From Klebsormidium nitens (Eukaryota; Plantae; Klebsormidiophyceae), in contig DF236950.1 of NCBI GenBank assembly GCA_000708835.1, positions 466,129-530,128 on the forward strand: a stretch of DNA of 64,000 nt. Reading direction: 5' to 3'. Of the stretch, positions 5,679 through 13,637 are shown piece after piece. The notes under the pieces are model-generated. The model worked only from the letters and a program-made list of their open reading frames with translations. It was not told where the DNA came from and searched no databases. Numbering within the stretch: the stretch's first letter is position 1; the number at the start of each line of letters is the position of its first letter. The translations under genes were made by a program, and so were the position numbers.

Positions 5679-7525
5679 CTAATCCATCCTGCCCTTGAGC
5701 GTCCTGGTGATGACCTCATTTTCAGAGCTGGAAGCGACAGAGAGGTACTGCATTAGCAGCACGAAAGGAACAGAAAGCATGGTTTTGAACGACCTAACCA
5801 ATCGGATGAACAACCAGAAGAAAAACTTCCGGAAACATAAAGTATCCGAAAAATCTGAGCCAATAGGGATATGCTCAGCCATTGAAGCAGTACGAGGCTG
5901 CAGTTTGAGAGTTTCCAACTTGCTCGAAAGATATGAGGAGAAGGAAAGAGGCAAAAGCAACACAAGCCTTGATAGTACACTTACACAATGTGGACAATGC
6001 CGCCCCAGCCACTCAGGCAATCGCGGTCCACAGATGAAAGCAGAGCTTGAGATATCACCTCAAAGAGGTCTTCGGGCTCCTGCATAGATTCGAGATGTGA
6101 TCAACTAAGTGGAGGAGATGCACCCGTCCTGGTTCATGTTCCAACTGTTCACAGGGATGACATCGGCAAAGCGGCGAGTATTGTATTGAGTCGCAGCGGG
6201 TGAGATTTCAAAACGGACAACTTTCATACTGATATGTCACACTACTCACCAAATCTGGTCTGTACATGGATTCGCAGGCCCCATAGAGTGACTCAGACGC
6301 GGTTCCGGAAACGACGAAATCACTGGAGAATTGCCTGCACAGTTGATTCAAGAACAATCGAGCTTAAACATCTGACAGGTTAAAAGCTACTGTTTAATAT
6401 CCTCACAGCTAACCAAAAGACGAGCAACTTGTCAAACATGAACCGATAAAAGGCACGTTGTAAAAACATGCGCAAACTTACAAGTATAACCACTGAGCAG
6501 GATTGTATATGCAAACAAGACTCCTTAGGTCAGGCACAAGAATCATGTATGCATTGACACAGAGTTCTACCAATCAAGAATTGCCGACGAGTGTCAGCTT
6601 GTAAGGACCTACTTTGCGCCCAGAAGATCCATTGTGCAGATGAAGGGCGATCCGTCCGAGTTCAAGCCCGCGATCACAGGCTCCGCAAAATAGGGGCCAA
6701 ACCTGGACCAACAAGCGGCATATCGAAGATCAGAACGGTTTTCGACCTGCCTCACCGTCGGCAACAAACGATGAGAAGAGAAATTTAGAGGCATGCTAGA
6801 GAAGGACACCTGCACAGAGGTAGCTTACACATGCCCACACAGGTGACCCGCATGAATCAATGGCTGATATACCGTTTCTCGTATAACATTGATGAGACCA
6901 GGTTTGCGAAGGTGGATGGCTTCATGTCCCTCTCCTCCCGCAGCTTGTACAGCTTGTGCCGAAAGACGAACCGCTCGTGCCTGCAGAGGGGTTCACCACC
7001 GGCTTTAGTGGCAGGCCAAACTCTGAGACACGCTTGCAGTACATGTCAAGTAAGAGAAGCGGCCAAGAGCAGGGGTTTGACAACAGGGTCCTTTTCAACA
7101 GCTGGAATTTGCCAAAACGAATCAGGAAGTAGTCCTACACCAAGTATGTAAAGTAAGTGGACTCAGAGTAAGTAAACTCACAGTGTCTGCACATCCGATG
7201 CTAAGCCAGAGAGTCCGATGTACAATTTGTCATGGATTTTGAAGATCCGCTGAAAGTCGGTTGCAAGTGTCTGCTGTTGGATGCCCAGCCGCCTGTCGCT
7301 TGCTATGGCGAAGCAATTCTTGCCCATCATGGCAATAATCGCACTGCCATTGTATGTAAGAATCTGCATGATATGAGAAAGACAGCAGTTGATGGATTGC
7401 GATTGGCGTAGAAGAGTGGTCAAAGGTGGTGCTCTGATTCGCAAGAACCAAAAAGAGTGGCCATTTGAACAATGGCTTGCCTTCCACATAAGGGGGAAGG
7501 ATGTGATGATGCAACTTACCGACAT
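5679..7525 (-). CDS. PBC1: 20S proteasome subunit beta type-3
   Basis: Exons 7525-7520 (ATG TCG), 7363-7182, ~6980-6873, 6702-6613, 6334-6250, 6079-5986 and ~5727-5679. Spliced protein runs [63 protein letters not shown] ... [14 protein letters not shown] ... [18 protein letters not shown] ... [15 protein letters not shown] ... RTLKGRMD. Confidence 0.97.
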
Positions 7526-8259: not shown

Positions 8260-8870
8260 ATTTGCCCCGCACGAATCTTGGTACCGCGCGGTCGGGACCG
8301 TCGAGGGATGGTGAGTACCCAGCCAAAGGTTGCAATAAAAGAGAATTGACGCCGACGGATCTGGGAATCGAACCCAGTGGCGCAAGAGGCACAAAGTTGC
8401 TGAATTTAAATTTTGGTAGAACCGGACGCGGTACTCGACGATTCGGACGCGGTCGGACACTCACCTGGTCGGGTAGCCTTCAAGCACACTAAAAACCTCA
8501 GACCAATGGCTTTGCCGTTAGTGGGAACCCTAATCGTAGAGCAGTCACAGGGAAGGGGCGTAACCCTAACGCACAGTCAGTGCTTTGTGACTTGACCCTA
8601 AGGCTAGTCGAGTGCCCGGTTGAAGTCGTGGTACTAGGTCCGGTTCTCGTACAAATTCTCCGCGGTGGGTACCGTTCCAGTCGATCGACGGTCTCGATCG
8701 TCCGTCTCCAACTCTACCAAAATTTATTCGGGAACTTTGTCCGTTTTGCCCCAGTAGCGGGAGCTCGCGACTTGAGAGCGAGCTCTTTTGCCAATGAACC
8801 AAAAAGTACGACCAATTCCTCTGCTGACGGATCCGAAATACCGTACTGCCATTCGAATTCGCACCCCGGC
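8260..8870. repeat. Degenerate long inverted repeat (arms ~8260-8420 and ~8713-8870) between the divergent PBC1 and IF-1-fusion genes
   Basis: Reverse complement of 8370-8420 (tctaccaaaatttaaattcagcaactttgtgcctcttgcgccact) aligns with 8713-8757 (tctaccaaaatttattcgggaactttgtccgttttgccccagt). Weaker similarity continues outward. Confidence 0.55.
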
Positions 8871-9212
8871 CTAGGCCCACGAATAATTAAGTTTGAACTT
8901 TTTACGATTTCGCATCGATCGACCAAACTGGATTATTTTTAATTTCGTTTTGTCCCATTTTCCCTGCTAAAAGACCTGTTTTTGGCCTTAAAAACTTTGA
9001 ATTTGCATTTCAACTTTTCGACCAGGCAGAGAATAATTCATTGAAATTTTCGACCTGGTCTTGAATAATTATTTTTTATGCGAATTCACAATGGCAGTAC
9101 GGTATACAAAAAAGAGATTTGTGAAATCGACGGTGTACAATACATGAGACTGATCCCCTTCTTTCATCGACGGGTGAATCAGGTACAATTCCGTCAGAGT
9201 AAACAAGCACGA

Positions 9213-9375
9213 ATCACAGTAAATCGACTCGGTCACAGATAACCGAGCCTCCAAGAGGTCAAAGGTGAGCGACAAGTGCACACGGTCACATTGAACCGAC
9301 TCATTTCACAGCAACCGACTCGGTCACAGTTAAACTGAGCCGCCATGAGTACGAAAGTGAGCGGTGAGTGTACAC
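9213..9375 (+). repeat. Degenerate direct repeat (period ~92 bp) built from a ~17-bp submotif tcacag-n-aaccgactc
   Basis: cgactcggtcacagataaccgagcc...gtgagcgacaagtgcacac recurs as cgactcggtcacagttaaactgagcc...gtgagcggtgagtgtacac. Confidence 0.55.
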
Positions 9376-9636
9376 TCAAACAGTGCTACAGCAAATATGA
9401 GCAAAGCCTCAGTGTGAAGATGCGCAAGAGTGTGCTTATTGAAACCCTTGAGTGTGAGACGATTATATCAGTGTGAGTGCCTGTTTACACCTTTTGAAAC
9501 GCATTAGGCTCGTCGCGACCTGAGTCATGTCTGCGCAGCAAAATTGGTCTCTAGAATTGGCAGAGGTGCTTCTTCGAGTTCTTCGCGGCGGGCCGCTTTG
9601 CGCTGCGACTCAGGCTGGCTTCTGCTTTGGCCAGGA

Positions 9637-12285
9637 ATGGCCACCACAAGCAGATGGGGGTGTCTGCATCAGCTCTCCGCAACTGGGGGAGTCACTTCAG
9701 GCTCTCGTCATGAGAAAGCAGGGGCTAGAATTTCAGCAGACCTTTGCTTATGCCCGGCAAGAGCACACTGGCGTCACTTGCGAGAATCTTTACGAGAAAG
9801 GGGATTGGTGACTTGGAGGGGGCAAGGCCAGGAATGGAGGGGAACGCCACACTTTGTTCGATATAGCAGGTGAGTGTCACAAGTCAGCATTCTGTATTAA
9901 ATGCAAATTGTGGGCTCCTATTCTCTGAAAGAGTTGTTTCTCCTGGAGGTTGAAGTCAAAGAGACAGCTTGCCAGCTTGCCTCAAAGATCACTATGTCAC
10001 GTAAGTACTTTGCACCTCAAAACCTCAACGCAAAGTTCGTGTGCGCTCCTTAAATCCGTGCCTGCTTGTTCCACAAACGTTGCAAAGTGACCCGCAAGCT
10101 CGATTTCTACTCCTTGCCCCTTCGTTTGGTCCTGCCCTTTTGCTGCCTGGTCAAGCTTCGGGCAACTTTTGTCAGGTCTTGACCGGAGGCATGTCGAGCC
10201 CCCGCGTCTATTTTTTCCCCGGCCCCATGCCCGATTCTGGGGCTCAGTGTGGACAGGTTGTCCATATGCTTACCTTATCTAGGCCCTTCTGACCTGCTCA
10301 GTCTGTTAGTACATGGCTTTTGCTTCTGCTGAGAAACCCATGAAAGCCCCTAATGTTTCAGCTGACATTGTTTCTCATTGAGATTGAATGCTGTTTGGGG
10401 CCTCTCTTCAGGTGCTCCGCTTCCGACGGCCCCTCCCCCCCCTCCTACTCCAAGCGCCACCCTCGCCCCCCTCCCCCCGGTAGTGAACCTCGTCAAGATG
10501 CCCCCCGGACTGACAGGAAGAAGGAGGCGCACCGGCATGCGCTGCACTTGGAGCGGTTGGGCCCTCGCAAGAGGGCCAAGATGTTGGCAGGGCCTGCCGG
10601 CAGCAGGGCGTGGAAGCGGGCACGGAGAAAGGTGGCCAAGGTTGCTGAAAGCATCAGCGAAGTAGTGGATGCCGCCGCAGCGGCGGTCGCGCTCCCGACA
10701 TTGGCCCCTCTCTCTAGTGAAGCAGCCCAGGCATTTGCTCGCGTCAGCGGGCAAGGGCCCTCTAGTTGGGATGCAATGGCAACCGAGGCGGACCGCCTCC
10801 GAGACAGCGGCTCGTCAGCCGCTTCTGCTCTGGCCGCGTTCCTGGAGCTGGACGGGTCTCGTCTACCGTCACCTGACGGCGGGTCCTTTTTCACCAGCCC
10901 ACATCAGTTCCCCGCATCCCATGCCCTGCAAATGGAGGACAAGCCCCCGGGGACGCCTGGTCTGAGTGTTGACAGCCAAGCAGACGAAGCTGGAAGTGGC
11001 GCTTGGGGCGAGGCGACGCGAATGGCGCTGCCCGTGTTGGGCTTGGCGGCTGCCACTGTGGTGGGGACACTGTTTACGCGGCGAGCCGGTGTTCCCAGAA
11101 TGCTGCCCCGAATGGCGATGCGTGCGCTGGCCTACCCCGCCCTCTTCCTGCAAACCGGCATTCTGGCCTCAGAGCAGGGAGCGGAGAGGGCAAGACAGGT
11201 GAAGCCTGAGCACTGGTGTAGCCCTGTGGGGTTGATGTTGAGACCCTTTTCTGGTGTTTGGTGTCGTGGCAATCTCAACCTGACCAGAATGGGTAGACGT
11301 TCTGTACAGACGCCTTGCATCTTGTTTGGGGGCTTGAGATTGCCTGAAAGGCTGTTGGCTGAGTTGCGCATCCTCGCTGTGCTTGTCGAACAAGTTTTCG
11401 ACCCCATCTTTGTTAGGCTCAAACACACGCGTCTGCTGCTTTGGGTGGTGCAGGCTGCCTTGTGGAGCCTGCCCCCCGCTTTGCTCGTCTCGTCCTGCTT
11501 CATGGGCTGGCGTGTGGCGGCCGCCTCAGCCGCGGCGTTCCTGACGGCGCAACTCGTCAACGTCAACGTCTCAGAGAGGCTGCCCCGAGGTGCGCTCTCA
11601 GTTCCGCACTCTTGGCCCCCGGCACTTGATATTTTTGCAGTTACAAGAAACGAACACATTCCATACTTGAGAGTTTTTGTCAGAGGGTGCTTTTATCTTT
11701 GTGGCCGTGTCTGAGGGCTGCTCGTTTGACTGTCGTCTTGTGCACGTTCAAATTGCTTGCCCTGACTTTGGCGCCATTCGATTTGTTAAAAGAACGAGCC
11801 CCTTCCGCTCCTGCTGCGCAGCTTCCCATTGGTGGCAGGTCGTCCTGGTTGCTGCAGCGGCCGCCTCCGTTGTCGACGCTCTCGTCTTCGCCCGCATCTC
11901 CTCGAGGGCCGTGCACGGCCTTGCATTGGCCATGGCCTTGACGGGCGACTTTGGCGAGGTTGGCGAGCGGCGGCGGTTCTCGGGCGTGCGGCCAGCGCTG
12001 AAGAAGCAGAGTGCGATGATCGAGATGGAGGGCGAGGTGCAGAAGGCTCTGCCGAACGCCATGTTCCAGGTGGCGCTGGACAACGGGTGCCAGGTGCTGG
12101 CGCACATCTCGGGCAAAATCCGGCGCAACAGAATTGAGATCTTCCAGGGGGACCGTGTCAAGGTTGAGATCTCACCTTACGACCTTACAAGAGGTCGCAT
12201 CACGCACAGGAACAGGCGGGCAGGGCAAGGGCCGGCCACTCCAGGCGGGCCCAATCCTCCGGGGGGCAACCCTGTGCCAGCATGA
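9637..12285 (+). CDS. Predicted plastid-targeted multi-pass membrane protein with a C-terminal translation initiation factor IF-1 (S1 fold) domain, ~539 aa
   Basis: Exons 9637-9869, 10412-11198, 11454-11589 and 11822-12285 total 1620 nt with matching phases. The N-terminus is Ser/Thr/Arg-rich and transit-like (MATTSRWG...YSR|CSASD). Four to five hydrophobic segments precede the IF-1 domain. Confidence 0.7.
12001..12219 (+). other. infA: Complete IF-1 (InfA) domain, cyanobacterial/plastid type, uninterrupted by introns
   Basis: [73 protein letters not shown] carries the IF-1 hallmarks [28 protein letters not shown] and PYDLTxGRI. Confidence 0.96.
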
Positions 12286-13637
12286 GAACAAAGGCGGTTT
12301 TAGCGTGTCCTTGATCGAGAGCACTAGGCGTGCCTCACCCATTTGACTGACCTGTATTGCTTGTAAAGGTGGTTGGTGGTATTATGGGAGCGTATAGTGG
12401 GCGGTTGCTGTGGTCACCAGCTTTACCCAGTACGGTGTTGTGTACCATAGGATATATACTTAGGCATGGTCAATTGCCAGGAGACTTACTGCAATAAGCG
12501 GGACGCCGCTGCTATGTAGCAAGCACCTCACGTCGATTTCCATTCATACAGCACTCACACTGAGTAAGCTTGATTGGTCGGGCGTGCAACCTGGTGGAAG
12601 CTTTTCCAAAGCCACAAAGCCAGTGGCCGTCCACGGTGCCCATCTATCAAGTATGTTTGATATAGTGTTTTGGAAGGTAACCATAACACATGGTTCTTAC
12701 ACATGCAAAGGAACCCTTCCGTCGGCATCATTATCGGAGGCGGCGGTCAAGCTTCGTGTTGAAGATGCCGGGAGGACAGATATCATGTGAGCCTGGCCTA
12801 GCCTGCTTATGATCATATAAGCAGGACTTAAATCAGGACATGAGTCCGCGTCACCATGTCGTACGTGGCGCATGCACTGAACCATGGAGTCCTCAATTGA
12901 TCGCGCGTGTGCACGCATGCCTAAGTGCATGTGCTGAAAGCTAGATCCGGCCGTCAGTGATGTCTGACTTGGACCGATCATAAAACAATTAATTGCATAC
13001 GGGTACATGTGGCCCCGGCCGGTGACGTACAAGTTCTCAGCCGGCTGCATGAGAACTCGTACGTGATTGCAACAGGATTTTGCTGTATACAATCAGAAGC
13101 ATGCGCATGCAGTCATCTATGTAGCTAGCTGCAGCTAAAGGTCATGCTGATTGGTAAAATGTTCAATGGATTCAACGGTGTAGGCTCGCAGCTGTTGTTT
13201 GGCGTATACCGTCATGTGCGCACTCTCATATATGTCCATGCTCGGGCGATCGCGATATCGAGCATGCCCTCAACCGGATCCGGATTGTGTGAGCCTTAGC
13301 TCTGACTACAAGGTCATGCTGTGCGGGATCGTCCTTACGAACTTAATTGTTGTCAGCAGCTACTATACCAGTACTCTGAACCGCCTACAGCTTTTAGAAT
13401 TGTTGCAAAGTCGCATGTGCTCCACTGACCGTCGTTCGTTTTGATTGGTATAATCAGGCGGCCGCGCATGTCCTTTTGAAATGGCGGGAGAGCACTTGAA
13501 TGACATGTACTGCGAGCAGATCAAACCTTACATCAGAACTGTAATCATACATTCCTCATGTCATTAGCGTGCATGCCGCAGAATTAGTCTTTCCGTGTAA
13601 CAGGAAGATCGAGAGTGTTCCCTCATGCACTCGAGCC

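What the first reader, a model, noticed from the sequence alone, without database searches (positions are those of the whole stretch)
9637..12285. Translation initiation factor IF-1 fused to the C-terminus of a multi-pass, plastid-targeted membrane protein
The sequence shows a complete, well-conserved, intron-free IF-1 in frame at the end of exon 4. It follows directly on hydrophobic segments ([17 protein letters not shown]; [35 protein letters not shown]; [21 protein letters not shown]; [10 protein letters not shown]), and the four exons join in phase. Known IF-1s are soluble ~70-aa proteins, and nuclear copies normally add only a transit peptide. infA has moved from plastid to nucleus repeatedly. 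I infer either a transferred infA that hitchhiked into the last exon of a plastid membrane gene, or a membrane-tethered IF-1 that could localise initiation at thylakoid or envelope membranes. VVDALVFAR faintly recalls the EExxFRG motif of CPBP/Abi proteases with the glutamates lost, which is speculative. I know of no described protein with this architecture.
Basis: partly seen in the sequence, partly recalled or inferred. Interest (0 to 1): 0.78.

Follow-up and report, generated by a model that had tools for sequence, protein, structure and literature searches.

The report
Plastid IF-1 fused to transporter remnant
A green alga (Klebsormidium nitens) makes its chloroplast-type translation initiation factor IF-1 as the tail of a five-helix membrane protein derived from a queuosine-precursor transporter, a conserved and so far undescribed way of re-housing a gene that moved from the chloroplast to the nucleus.

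Summary
The window is Klebsormidium nitens nuclear DNA, not human. An intron-free contig from a sister species joins exons 2-3-4 at the same junctions. A fourth species keeps all four exons in phase.

The membrane part is not CPBP-like. It is a diverged Vut_1/YhhQ (COG1738, preQ0/preQ1 transporter) domain, above Pfam's cut-off and collinear over three exons. It has five helices. The family's sixth helix is replaced, just after a conserved GD motif, by a basic disordered linker and a complete IF-1 OB fold. Ten of the family's most conserved residues, mostly polar, are substituted, yet the membrane part is under strong purifying selection (omega about 0.1, and 0 for exon 3).

The IF-1 domain is sister to plastid-encoded infA of other Klebsormidiophyceae. 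A second nuclear paralogue shares the last intron, has a decayed Vut_1 part, and has a first exon copied from the neighbouring EPSP synthase gene.

The best reading is a hitch-hiking organelle-to-nucleus transfer. Whether mature IF-1 stays tethered or is cleaved off is open.

The parts
9637..9869 (+). Exon 1: start codon and 77 codons plus 2 nt. The peptide is transit-peptide-like, rich in Ser, Thr and Arg, with no acidic residue in the first 25.
   Evidence: The model equals GAQ77626.1. The ATG, the reading frame (one in-frame 3-nt indel) and the GT donor are conserved in species 4, L007 184-413. Omega is 0.69. No transcript evidence.
10412..11198 (+). Exon 2: about 200 aa of low-complexity Ala/Ser/Pro-rich region, then Vut_1-like helices TM1 (11025-11075) and TM2 (11115-11165) and the first codon of TM3.
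   Evidence: Covered by the spliced contig L001. The family HMM matches positions 39-68. Omega is 0.24-0.35 for the soluble part and 0.145 for TM1-2. Loop 1 is unusually basic.
11199..11453 (+). Intron 2, 255 nt, in frame and stop-free in K. nitens only.
   Evidence: It is absent from the spliced contig L001. The homologous introns in L003 (332 nt) and L007 carry in-frame stops (P0122, P0123).
11454..11589 (+). Exon 3: Vut_1-like helices TM3 and TM4, the most conserved part of the gene.
   Evidence: 45/45 aa identical to species 4 at dS 0.58. 44/45 identical to species 2 at saturated dS. Family HMM positions 69-111, i-E 2.5e-09.
11822..11943 (+). Exon 4, first part: Vut_1-like helix TM5 (11830-11901, WW...VD..LF motif) and a 9-residue remnant of helix 6 (11917-11943).
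   Evidence: Family HMM positions 113-153. Alignment A1. AF2 helices 389-412 and 418-426. This part is also kept in paralogue B.
11944..12015 (+). Linker [24 protein letters not shown]. It runs from the family's conserved GD motif, where Vut_1 helix 6 would continue, to the start of IF-1. It is the junction of the two parents.
   Evidence: pLDDT is below 50. The motif is conserved in both paralogues and in all species. The KKQ matches the N-terminus of plastid-encoded Streptosarcina infA.
12016..12219 (+). Complete bacterial/plastid-type IF-1 OB-fold domain, residues 451-518.
   Evidence: PF01176 E 3.7e-25. TIGR00008 scores 105 bits against a cut-off of 61. Foldseek 4ql5 TM 0.96, and 1hr0_W (30S-bound IF1) TM 0.89.
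12220..12285 (+). Gly/Pro-rich C-terminal tail and stop codon.
   Evidence: The tail varies between species.

Best explanation
This is a chimeric nuclear gene created by a chloroplast-to-nucleus transfer of infA in the Klebsormidium lineage. The plastid infA reading frame became joined in frame to the last coding exon of a YhhQ/Vut_1-type (COG1738) six-helix transporter gene, just after the conserved GD at the start of helix 6.

One spliced mRNA (shown for exons 2-4 in a sister species) encodes the following, in order:
- a transit-peptide-like N-terminus;
- about 200 aa of low-complexity sequence;
- five Vut_1-derived transmembrane helices plus a helix-6 stub;
- a flexible basic linker of about 24 aa;
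- a complete IF-1.

Inferred mechanism: the host gene supplies promoter, introns and targeting information. The precursor is imported into the plastid and inserted into a membrane through the Vut_1-derived helices. The linker and IF-1 lie on the stromal, positive-inside face, where IF-1 serves 30S initiation.

The Vut_1 part has lost helix 6 and ten of the family's most conserved residues, mostly polar, so it is probably no longer a preQ0/preQ1 transporter. It is nevertheless under strong purifying selection, so it has a sequence-specific role of its own (carrier, anchor or a new membrane function).

The mature form is not settled. I put release of soluble IF-1 by cleavage in the conserved disordered linker at about 0.5. 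That would parallel maize SDH2-RPS14, which I cite from memory. I put permanent tethering at about 0.35. The confidence given here (0.8) is for the chimeric hitch-hiking gene as such, not for either mature form.
For: - Gene model: it equals GAQ77626.1.
- Splicing: spliced contig L001 against genomic L003. The same four exons are in phase in L007.
- Host family: Vut_1 identity at 38.2 bits against GA 27.2. The exhaustive HMMER hits outside Klebsormidium that I scanned, 17 of about 70, all match Vut_1. There are three collinear HMM matches across exons 2, 3 and 4.
- Fusion point: the alignment places it at GD, the start of family helix 6.
- Origin of IF-1: the clade with plastid-encoded Hormidiella and Streptosarcina infA has support 99/98. 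No short Klebsormidium IF-1 is among the best 120 hits.
- Selection: omega is 0.116 for the membrane part and 0 for exon 3. It is 0.063 and 0.012 against a more distant species.
- Paralogue B: it shares intron position and phase, so the fusion predates the duplication.
- Structure and charge: five helices, a disordered linker and an OB fold. The charge bias puts loop 1 and the C-terminal linker on the same, positive side.
- Precedent for hitch-hiking: SODcp-RPL32 (PMC8429499).
Against: - No transcript or protein data exist for K. nitens itself, and none spans the exon 1-2 junction.
- Absence of infA from the Klebsormidium plastome was not verified.
- Plastid targeting is inferred only from composition and from the origin of IF-1. 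YhhQ in Chloropicon is predicted mitochondrial.
- With five helices, the positive-inside pattern implies that the long N-terminal region lies on the trans side. That is awkward for a transit-peptide-led import.
- Paralogue B keeps only one hydrophobic helix, so the membrane domain is not strictly required to deliver IF-1.
- The Vut_1 tree places the domain on a very long branch (4.85 changes per column), so the donor lineage of the host gene is unknown.
Confidence: 0.8

Rival explanations
1. Permanently membrane-tethered IF-1. The mature protein keeps the five helices, and IF-1 works on a leash of about 24 residues at the stromal face of the envelope or thylakoid membrane, biasing 30S initiation towards the membrane.
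For: The helix just upstream of IF-1 and the AMA-x-x-GDFGEVG-basic linker are conserved in both paralogues, even where the rest of Vut_1 has decayed. The membrane part is under strong purifying selection. The charge pattern places IF-1 on the positive (stromal) side. The linker is predicted to be flexible.
Against: To my knowledge all characterised IF-1 proteins are small soluble factors that cycle on and off the 30S A site. Nothing here shows that the precursor is not cleaved. Paralogue B could supply soluble IF-1.
Confidence: 0.35
2. IF-1 is made on its own from an internal promoter or start codon (intron 3 or exon 4), and the long fused ORF is incidental.
For: The K. subtile Trinity ORF P0003 starts at the Met of AMAL and is labelled 'complete' and '.p2'.
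Against: P0003 is what an intron-3-retaining isoform would give. In K. nitens the frame through intron 3 is closed upstream, and its first ATG is that same Met. The ATG at 12016 is K. nitens-specific. A product starting there or at AMAL would carry acidic residues and no transit peptide. The spliced contig L001 reads through uninterrupted for 410 codons. An omega of about 0.1 upstream shows that the fused frame is translated.
Confidence: 0.08
3. The protein is targeted to mitochondria, or dually, because the host YhhQ gene was a mitochondrial transporter.
For: Chloropicon YhhQ is predicted mitochondrial, and YhhQ is absent from almost all other green plants (PMC12301720).
Against: The IF-1 domain is of plastid origin. 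Paralogue B carries the N-terminus of EPSP synthase, a plastid enzyme by established knowledge. GenBank names both genes chloroplast IF-1.
Confidence: 0.1
4. Copy A is a decaying or mis-merged gene model, and only paralogue B is the working plastid IF-1.
For: B has a conventional-looking transit peptide. The IF-1 domains of A and B are identical in protein sequence, with reduced pS, so gene conversion could mask decay.
Against: A is intact in four species, with saturated dS to one of them, and has omega well below 1 in every region except exon 1. It is transcribed and correctly spliced in a sister species, and an A-type transcript exists in K. subtile.
Confidence: 0.05

Closest known systems
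SODcp-RPL32 chimeric nuclear gene of Malpighiales (PMC8429499; Cusack and Wolfe 2007 and Ueda et al. 2007 as cited there)
   Same: A plastid gene moved to the nucleus, landed as the last exon of an existing gene for an organelle protein, and borrows its 5' exons. Later duplication and divergence of the copies also occurs.
   Different: There the host is a soluble enzyme, and alternative splicing or subfunctionalisation gives separate SOD and RPL32 products. Here the host is a polytopic membrane transporter truncated inside its last helix. No alternative terminal exon was found. The host-derived part is itself remodelled but conserved.
SDH2-RPS14 of maize and rice mitochondria (from memory: Figueroa et al. 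1999/2000; Kubo et al. 1999)
   Same: A transferred organelle gene is fused behind a truncated host protein. In maize the chimeric precursor is cleaved between the two parts.
   Different: That case is mitochondrial and the host is soluble. Cleavage has not been tested here.
Nuclear INFA genes of angiosperms (Millen et al. 2001, as cited in PMC9038950 and PMC8429499)
   Same: Repeated, lineage-specific transfer of plastid infA to the nucleus, with IF-1 at the C-terminus of a longer precursor.
   Different: Angiosperm copies add only a short transit peptide, giving precursors of about 140-150 aa. This one is 539 aa with five membrane helices, and it is in a streptophyte alga.
YhhQ / Vut_1 (PF02592, COG1738) preQ0/preQ1 or queuine transporters
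   Same: Helices 1-5 are homologous and collinear, and they keep the YP..F, RxAxAS, Q, WW and D..F motifs.
   Different: It lacks helix 6. Ten highly conserved residues are replaced (N297T, T313A, D327G, N330A, R331S, F346L, D376N, F380S, R384P, P393V). Loop charges are redistributed. It falls far below the NCBIfam equivalog cut-offs. It sits on a very long branch.
Plastid-encoded infA of Hormidiella parvula and Streptosarcina (Klebsormidiophyceae)
   Same: 77-79 percent identical IF-1 domains, including the KKQ..IEMEG N-terminus. They form the sister clade.
   Different: Those are free-standing proteins of 81-85 aa (I infer they are plastome-encoded from the Streptosarcina RefSeq YP_ accessions and source names; nothing retrieved says so for Hormidiella).

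Membership tests
Bacterial/plastid IF-1 (infA; PF01176, TIGR00008) | Profile match above the curated cut-off | tested here: met
   PF01176 scores 87.8 bits against 30.2. TIGR00008 scores 105.4 bits against 61.15.
Bacterial/plastid IF-1 (infA; PF01176, TIGR00008) | S1-like five-stranded OB fold | tested here: met
   The AF2 model has pLDDT of about 83-96 in the core of the domain. Foldseek gives TM 0.96 and rmsd 0.6 A to 4ql5, and TM 0.89 to 30S-bound 1hr0_W.
Bacterial/plastid IF-1 (infA; PF01176, TIGR00008) | Free-standing soluble protein of about 70-85 aa | tested here: not met
   It is the C-terminal domain of a 539-aa protein with five predicted membrane helices.
Bacterial/plastid IF-1 (infA; PF01176, TIGR00008) | Binds the 30S A site and supports initiation | not testable with these tools
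   Needs biochemistry or complementation.
Vut_1 / YhhQ (PF02592, COG1738) | Pfam profile match above the gathering score | tested here: met
   P0121:270-447 scores 38.2 bits against 27.2. The spliced L001 protein scores 30.6 bits.
Vut_1 / YhhQ (PF02592, COG1738) | NCBIfam equivalog cut-offs (TIGR00697, NF008406) | tested here: not met
   17.3 bits against 50.95, and 36.4 bits against 252.
Vut_1 / YhhQ (PF02592, COG1738) | Six transmembrane helices | tested here: not met
   There are five long helices plus a 9-residue stub. The family's helix 6 is replaced by the linker and IF-1. No relic helix-6 exon lies nearby.
Vut_1 / YhhQ (PF02592, COG1738) | Family-conserved residues, mostly polar, in the helices | tested here: not met
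   About half of the positions conserved at 75 percent or more are kept. Ten of the most conserved are replaced, and the same replacements are seen in the sister species.
Vut_1 / YhhQ (PF02592, COG1738) | Transport of preQ0, preQ1 or queuine | not testable with these tools
   Needs a transport assay.
Chimeric nuclear genes born from organelle-to-nucleus transfer | The transferred domain nests within the organelle-encoded clade of close relatives | tested here: met
   Clade with Hormidiella and Streptosarcina plastid infA, support 99/98.
Chimeric nuclear genes born from organelle-to-nucleus transfer | The gene is lost from the organelle genome | tested here: inconclusive
   No short Klebsormidium IF-1 is among the best 120 of 5,932 hits. 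infA is not among the genes retained in all streptophyte algal plastomes. No source I could read states the Klebsormidium status.
Chimeric nuclear genes born from organelle-to-nucleus transfer | The upstream exons come from a pre-existing nuclear gene | tested here: met
   Exons 2-4 carry a collinear Vut_1 domain with spliceosomal introns.
Chimeric nuclear genes born from organelle-to-nucleus transfer | The host protein is also produced by alternative splicing | tested here: not met
   No alternative exon encoding Vut_1 helix 6 lies in the introns or in the 900 nt downstream. Transcript isoforms were not available.
   No CPBP hit at E up to 10. The motif in question aligns with the Vut_1 helix-5 motif.

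The most novel reading that the evidence does not exclude
Klebsormidium anchors a working IF-1 to a plastid membrane through a domesticated five-helix transporter remnant. Part of chloroplast translation initiation would then be physically localised at the envelope or thylakoid. This would be the first membrane-tethered bacterial-type initiation factor.
Probability: 0.3. Interest if true: 0.85.

Novelty: new variant of a known kind. Interest (0 to 1): 0.6.

Why it matters
Functional organelle-to-nucleus transfers are usually thought to need only a short transit peptide or a soluble host protein. Here the host is a polytopic membrane transporter of a family said to be absent from almost all green plants (PMC12301720).

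The host-derived helices have been remodelled and are then conserved as tightly as IF-1 itself. A paralogue shows a second route, a transit-peptide exon copied from the neighbouring EPSP synthase gene.

The locus therefore holds two solutions to the targeting problem side by side in one genome. It also dates an infA transfer within a streptophyte algal class.

It makes one concrete question testable: can a bacterial-type IF-1 work while tethered to a membrane, or must it be cut free? If it is tethered, that bears on how chloroplast translation is localised to membranes.

Tried and rejected
- **CPBP/Abi resemblance:** rejected.
- **Retention of the in-frame, stop-free intron 2 as coding:** rejected. 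It is spliced out in the sister species, and the homologous introns carry stops.
- **An alternative terminal exon encoding Vut_1 helix 6, the SODcp-RPL32-style solution:** none found with a family HMM over 9300-13200.
- **Origin of the host Vut_1 gene from a tree of the hits:** uninformative. The Klebsormidium domain sits alone on a branch of 4.85 changes per column, and only the quick tree finished.
- **Sequence search of solved structures with the membrane part:** no match at E up to 10. Foldseek hits for the whole model are dominated by the IF-1 domain.
- **Plastome status of infA in Klebsormidium:** not stated in the text of Lemieux 2016, Civan 2014 or Hori 2014, nor in the supplements of the 3,654-plastome survey.
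- **Long proteins carrying IF-1 elsewhere:** only four ENA metagenome ORFs, fused to unrelated enzymes and none with Vut_1. They look like bacterial gene-call read-throughs and were not followed.
- **Whether K. nitens also has an intact YhhQ gene:** could not be settled. The representative library carries no names.
Full report
**Identity of the window and check of the observation**

The region is eukaryotic, with GT-AG introns and about 50-60 percent G+C. It is not human. Joining 9637-9869, 10412-11198, 11454-11589 and 11822-12285 gives a 1620-nt ORF. Its 539-aa product is identical to P0121 = GAQ77626.1, [quoted passage not shown]. The gene lies on scaffold DF236950.1 of GCA_000708835.1, and that stretch maps to window position 6637 onward.

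The C-terminal domain is a complete IF-1:
- PF01176 gives E 3.7e-25.
- TIGR00008 scores 105 bits against a cut-off of 61.
- An AlphaFold model of residues 270-539 has mean pLDDT 79.7. Its OB fold superposes on solved IF-1 structures with TM 0.96 and rmsd 0.6 A, including 30S-bound IF1.

**Evidence that the fused reading frame is used**

Contig L001 (JGI sample 3300034941, 1292 nt) carries one uninterrupted ORF of 410 codons, open to its 5' edge. It matches window exons 2, 3 and 4 back to back, with junctions at 11198/11454 and 11589/11822.

Genomic contig L003, from a Logan assembly, is about 99 percent identical to L001. It carries introns of 332 and 400 nt at those same two points. L001 is therefore a spliced transcript of a sister species.

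A fourth species, L007, aligns to the window from exactly 9637 onward. It keeps the ATG, the frame (one 3-nt indel) and the donor of exon 1. All four of its exons assemble into one open frame.

Against L007 (dS about 0.45), omega by region is:

| Region | Omega |
|---|---|
| Exon 1 | 0.69 |
| Low-complexity part of exon 2 | 0.24-0.35 |
| TM1-2 | 0.145 |
| Exon 3 (45/45 residues identical) | 0 |
| TM5 to linker | 0.21 |

Against the more distant L001, synonymous sites are saturated (pS about 0.68). Exon 3 is still 44/45 identical, and the membrane part has omega 0.063. The upstream frame is thus translated and constrained.

Intron 2 is in frame and stop-free only in K. nitens, so it is an intron. 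The ATG at 12016 is a K. nitens-specific insertion, since the other sequences read KKQ(S/A)AIEMEG.

The K. subtile Trinity ORF that begins at the Met of AMAL is what an intron-3-retaining isoform would give. In K. nitens that Met is the first ATG after the in-frame stop in intron 3.

**What the membrane part is**

Pfam places residues 270-447 in Vut_1 (PF02592) at 38.2 bits against a gathering score of 27.2. NCBIfam's YhhQ model matches with E 3.8e-09 but far below its equivalog cut-off.

An exhaustive HMMER search of 1.84 billion representatives found 75 proteins at E up to 0.001. Apart from Klebsormidium fragments, they are proteins of 95-378 aa at 27-48 percent identity, mostly 28-40. All 17 that I aligned match Vut_1.

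An HMM built from those 17 hits matches the locus three times, collinearly: positions 39-68 in exon 2, 69-111 in exon 3 and 113-153 in exon 4. It matches nowhere else between 9300 and 13200.

In the alignment, the Klebsormidium sequence follows the family through helices 1-5 and up to the conserved GD that opens helix 6. There the family continues with V-K-L...L-x-P-Y, while Klebsormidium continues with [18 protein letters not shown] and IF-1.

The KKQ..IEMEG stretch is also the N-terminus of plastid-encoded Streptosarcina infA. The join therefore lies within about 15 residues after GDFG.

About half of the family's highly conserved positions are kept (YP..F, G, AR, R-x-A-x-AS, AFL, Q, WW, S, D). 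Ten of the most conserved are replaced, and the same replacements occur in the sister species:
- N297T, T313A, D327G, N330A, R331S
- F346L, D376N, F380S, R384P, P393V

The domain sits on a very long branch relative to all other Vut_1 proteins. The literature says YhhQ is absent from almost all green plants and is predicted mitochondrial in Chloropicon (PMC12301720).

**Structure and topology**

The model shows:
- five long helices (residues 273-301, 308-333, 335-357, 359-382, 389-412);
- a 9-residue helix (418-426);
- a disordered stretch (427-446, pLDDT below 50);
- the OB fold.

In the family, loops 2 and 4 carry the positive charge (mean K+R 2.7 and 3.6), and loop 1 carries none (0.1). In Klebsormidium, loop 1 has four Arg, loops 2 and 4 are weakened, and the stretch from helix 5 to IF-1 has eight K+R.

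By the positive-inside rule, this puts loop 1 and IF-1 on the same side, presumably stromal. That fits a five-helix protein, but it would place the long N-terminal region on the trans side. I regard the topology as unresolved.

**Origin of the IF-1 domain**

The nearest relatives outside Klebsormidium are the short IF-1 proteins of Hormidiella parvula (79 percent) and Streptosarcina (77 percent). I take both as plastid-encoded from the Streptosarcina RefSeq YP_ accessions and the source names; nothing retrieved says so for Hormidiella. No short Klebsormidium IF-1 appears among the best 120 hits.

In a maximum-likelihood tree, the Klebsormidium nuclear domains (support 91/76) are sister to those two. 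The whole klebsormidiophycean clade has support 99/98. This indicates a transfer within the class. I could not find a statement on whether the Klebsormidium plastome lacks infA.

**A second paralogue**

Searching for long proteins that carry IF-1 found P0209, 331 aa, also named chloroplast IF-1 of K. nitens, on scaffold DF237636.1. It resembles the window gene only from the exon-3 equivalent onward, at 69 percent over 164 residues.

Its four-exon model has the last intron at the same codon and in phase 1, and the preceding intron in phase 0, as in the window gene. The duplication therefore happened after the fusion.

Its exon 3 is a de-hydrophobised relic of helices 3-4. It still keeps a helix-5-like hydrophobic segment and the AMA-x-x-GDFGEVG-basic linker.

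Its first exon is homologous to the N-terminus of the EPSP synthase gene 7 kb away, at 75 percent over 116 nt. The same exon is present in the orthologous locus L002 of another species, which shares flanking threonyl-tRNA synthetase and glycosyltransferase genes.

Within K. nitens, the two IF-1 domains are identical in protein sequence. Their pS is 0.27, against 0.55-0.66 in the flanks, which hints at gene conversion.

**Interpretation**

Shown:
- a real, spliced, selectively constrained ORF that joins a Vut_1-derived five-helix domain to a plastid-derived IF-1;
- its conservation in several species;
- a post-fusion duplicate.

Inferred:
- the transfer hitch-hiked on a YhhQ-type gene, as rpl32 did on SODcp (PMC8429499);
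- the product goes to the plastid;
- the Vut_1 part no longer transports queuosine precursors but has acquired another constrained role.

Open: whether IF-1 is released by cleavage in the conserved, disordered linker, or stays tethered. I slightly favour release, by analogy with maize SDH2-RPS14 (recalled from memory) and because known IF-1s are soluble. Retention of the adjacent helix and linker in both paralogues fits either outcome.

**Novelty and score**

The gene model and its IF-1 name are public. My literature searches found no description of the fusion, its Vut_1 host or the paralogue. It is a new variant of a known kind, a chimeric nuclear gene made by organelle gene transfer. I score interest at 0.6. 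If IF-1 proves to be membrane-tethered, it would deserve about 0.85.

Noticed in passing
L005:5997-6110 and L005:12986-13099 (K. nitens DF237636.1); L002:8134-8292: The first exon of the second IF-1 paralogue (P0209) is a diverged copy of the 5' end, presumably the transit peptide, of the EPSP synthase gene 7 kb downstream. It is 75 percent identical over 116 nt and about 66 percent at protein level. The same exon is present in the orthologous locus of another species.
   Followed up: partly
window 12016-12219 versus L005 exon 4: The IF-1 domains of the two K. nitens paralogues are identical in protein sequence. Their pS is 0.27, against 0.55-0.66 in the flanking linker and tail. This suggests gene conversion confined to the IF-1 domain.
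   Followed up: partly
window 11199-11453: Intron 2 is exactly 255 nt, in frame and free of stops in K. nitens. A prokaryote-style ORF therefore runs 10353-11714 across it. The homologous introns in two other species are not open.
   Followed up: yes
P0210-P0213 (ENA metagenome proteins): Four metagenomic ORFs of 347-424 aa carry IF-1 fused to unrelated domains (lipoprotein diacylglyceryl transferase, aconitase, NAD-epimerase, nucleotidyl transferase). They are probably bacterial gene-call read-throughs.
   Followed up: no
window 6637-7525 (-) and 13638 onward (-): The flanking genes are a proteasome subunit upstream and a HEAT-repeat (DNAAF5-like) gene downstream, both on the minus strand (Pfam marks). 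Neither has an obvious link to plastid translation.
   Followed up: no
window 9222-9242 and 9313-9333; 8838-8853 / 9090-9105: Upstream of the start codon there is a 21-nt direct repeat (AA[T/C]CGACTCGGTCACAG[A/T]TAA, spacing 91) and a perfect 16-nt inverted repeat 236 nt apart. Either could be a promoter element or a transposon remnant.
   Followed up: no
P0130, P0140, P0170, P0179: Some Vut_1 homologues carry N-terminal extensions of 80-127 aa rich in Ser, Ala and Arg. One is from the cryptophyte Hanusia phi. So a few eukaryotic algae do have organelle-style YhhQ proteins. They form two small groups in the quick tree.
   Followed up: partly
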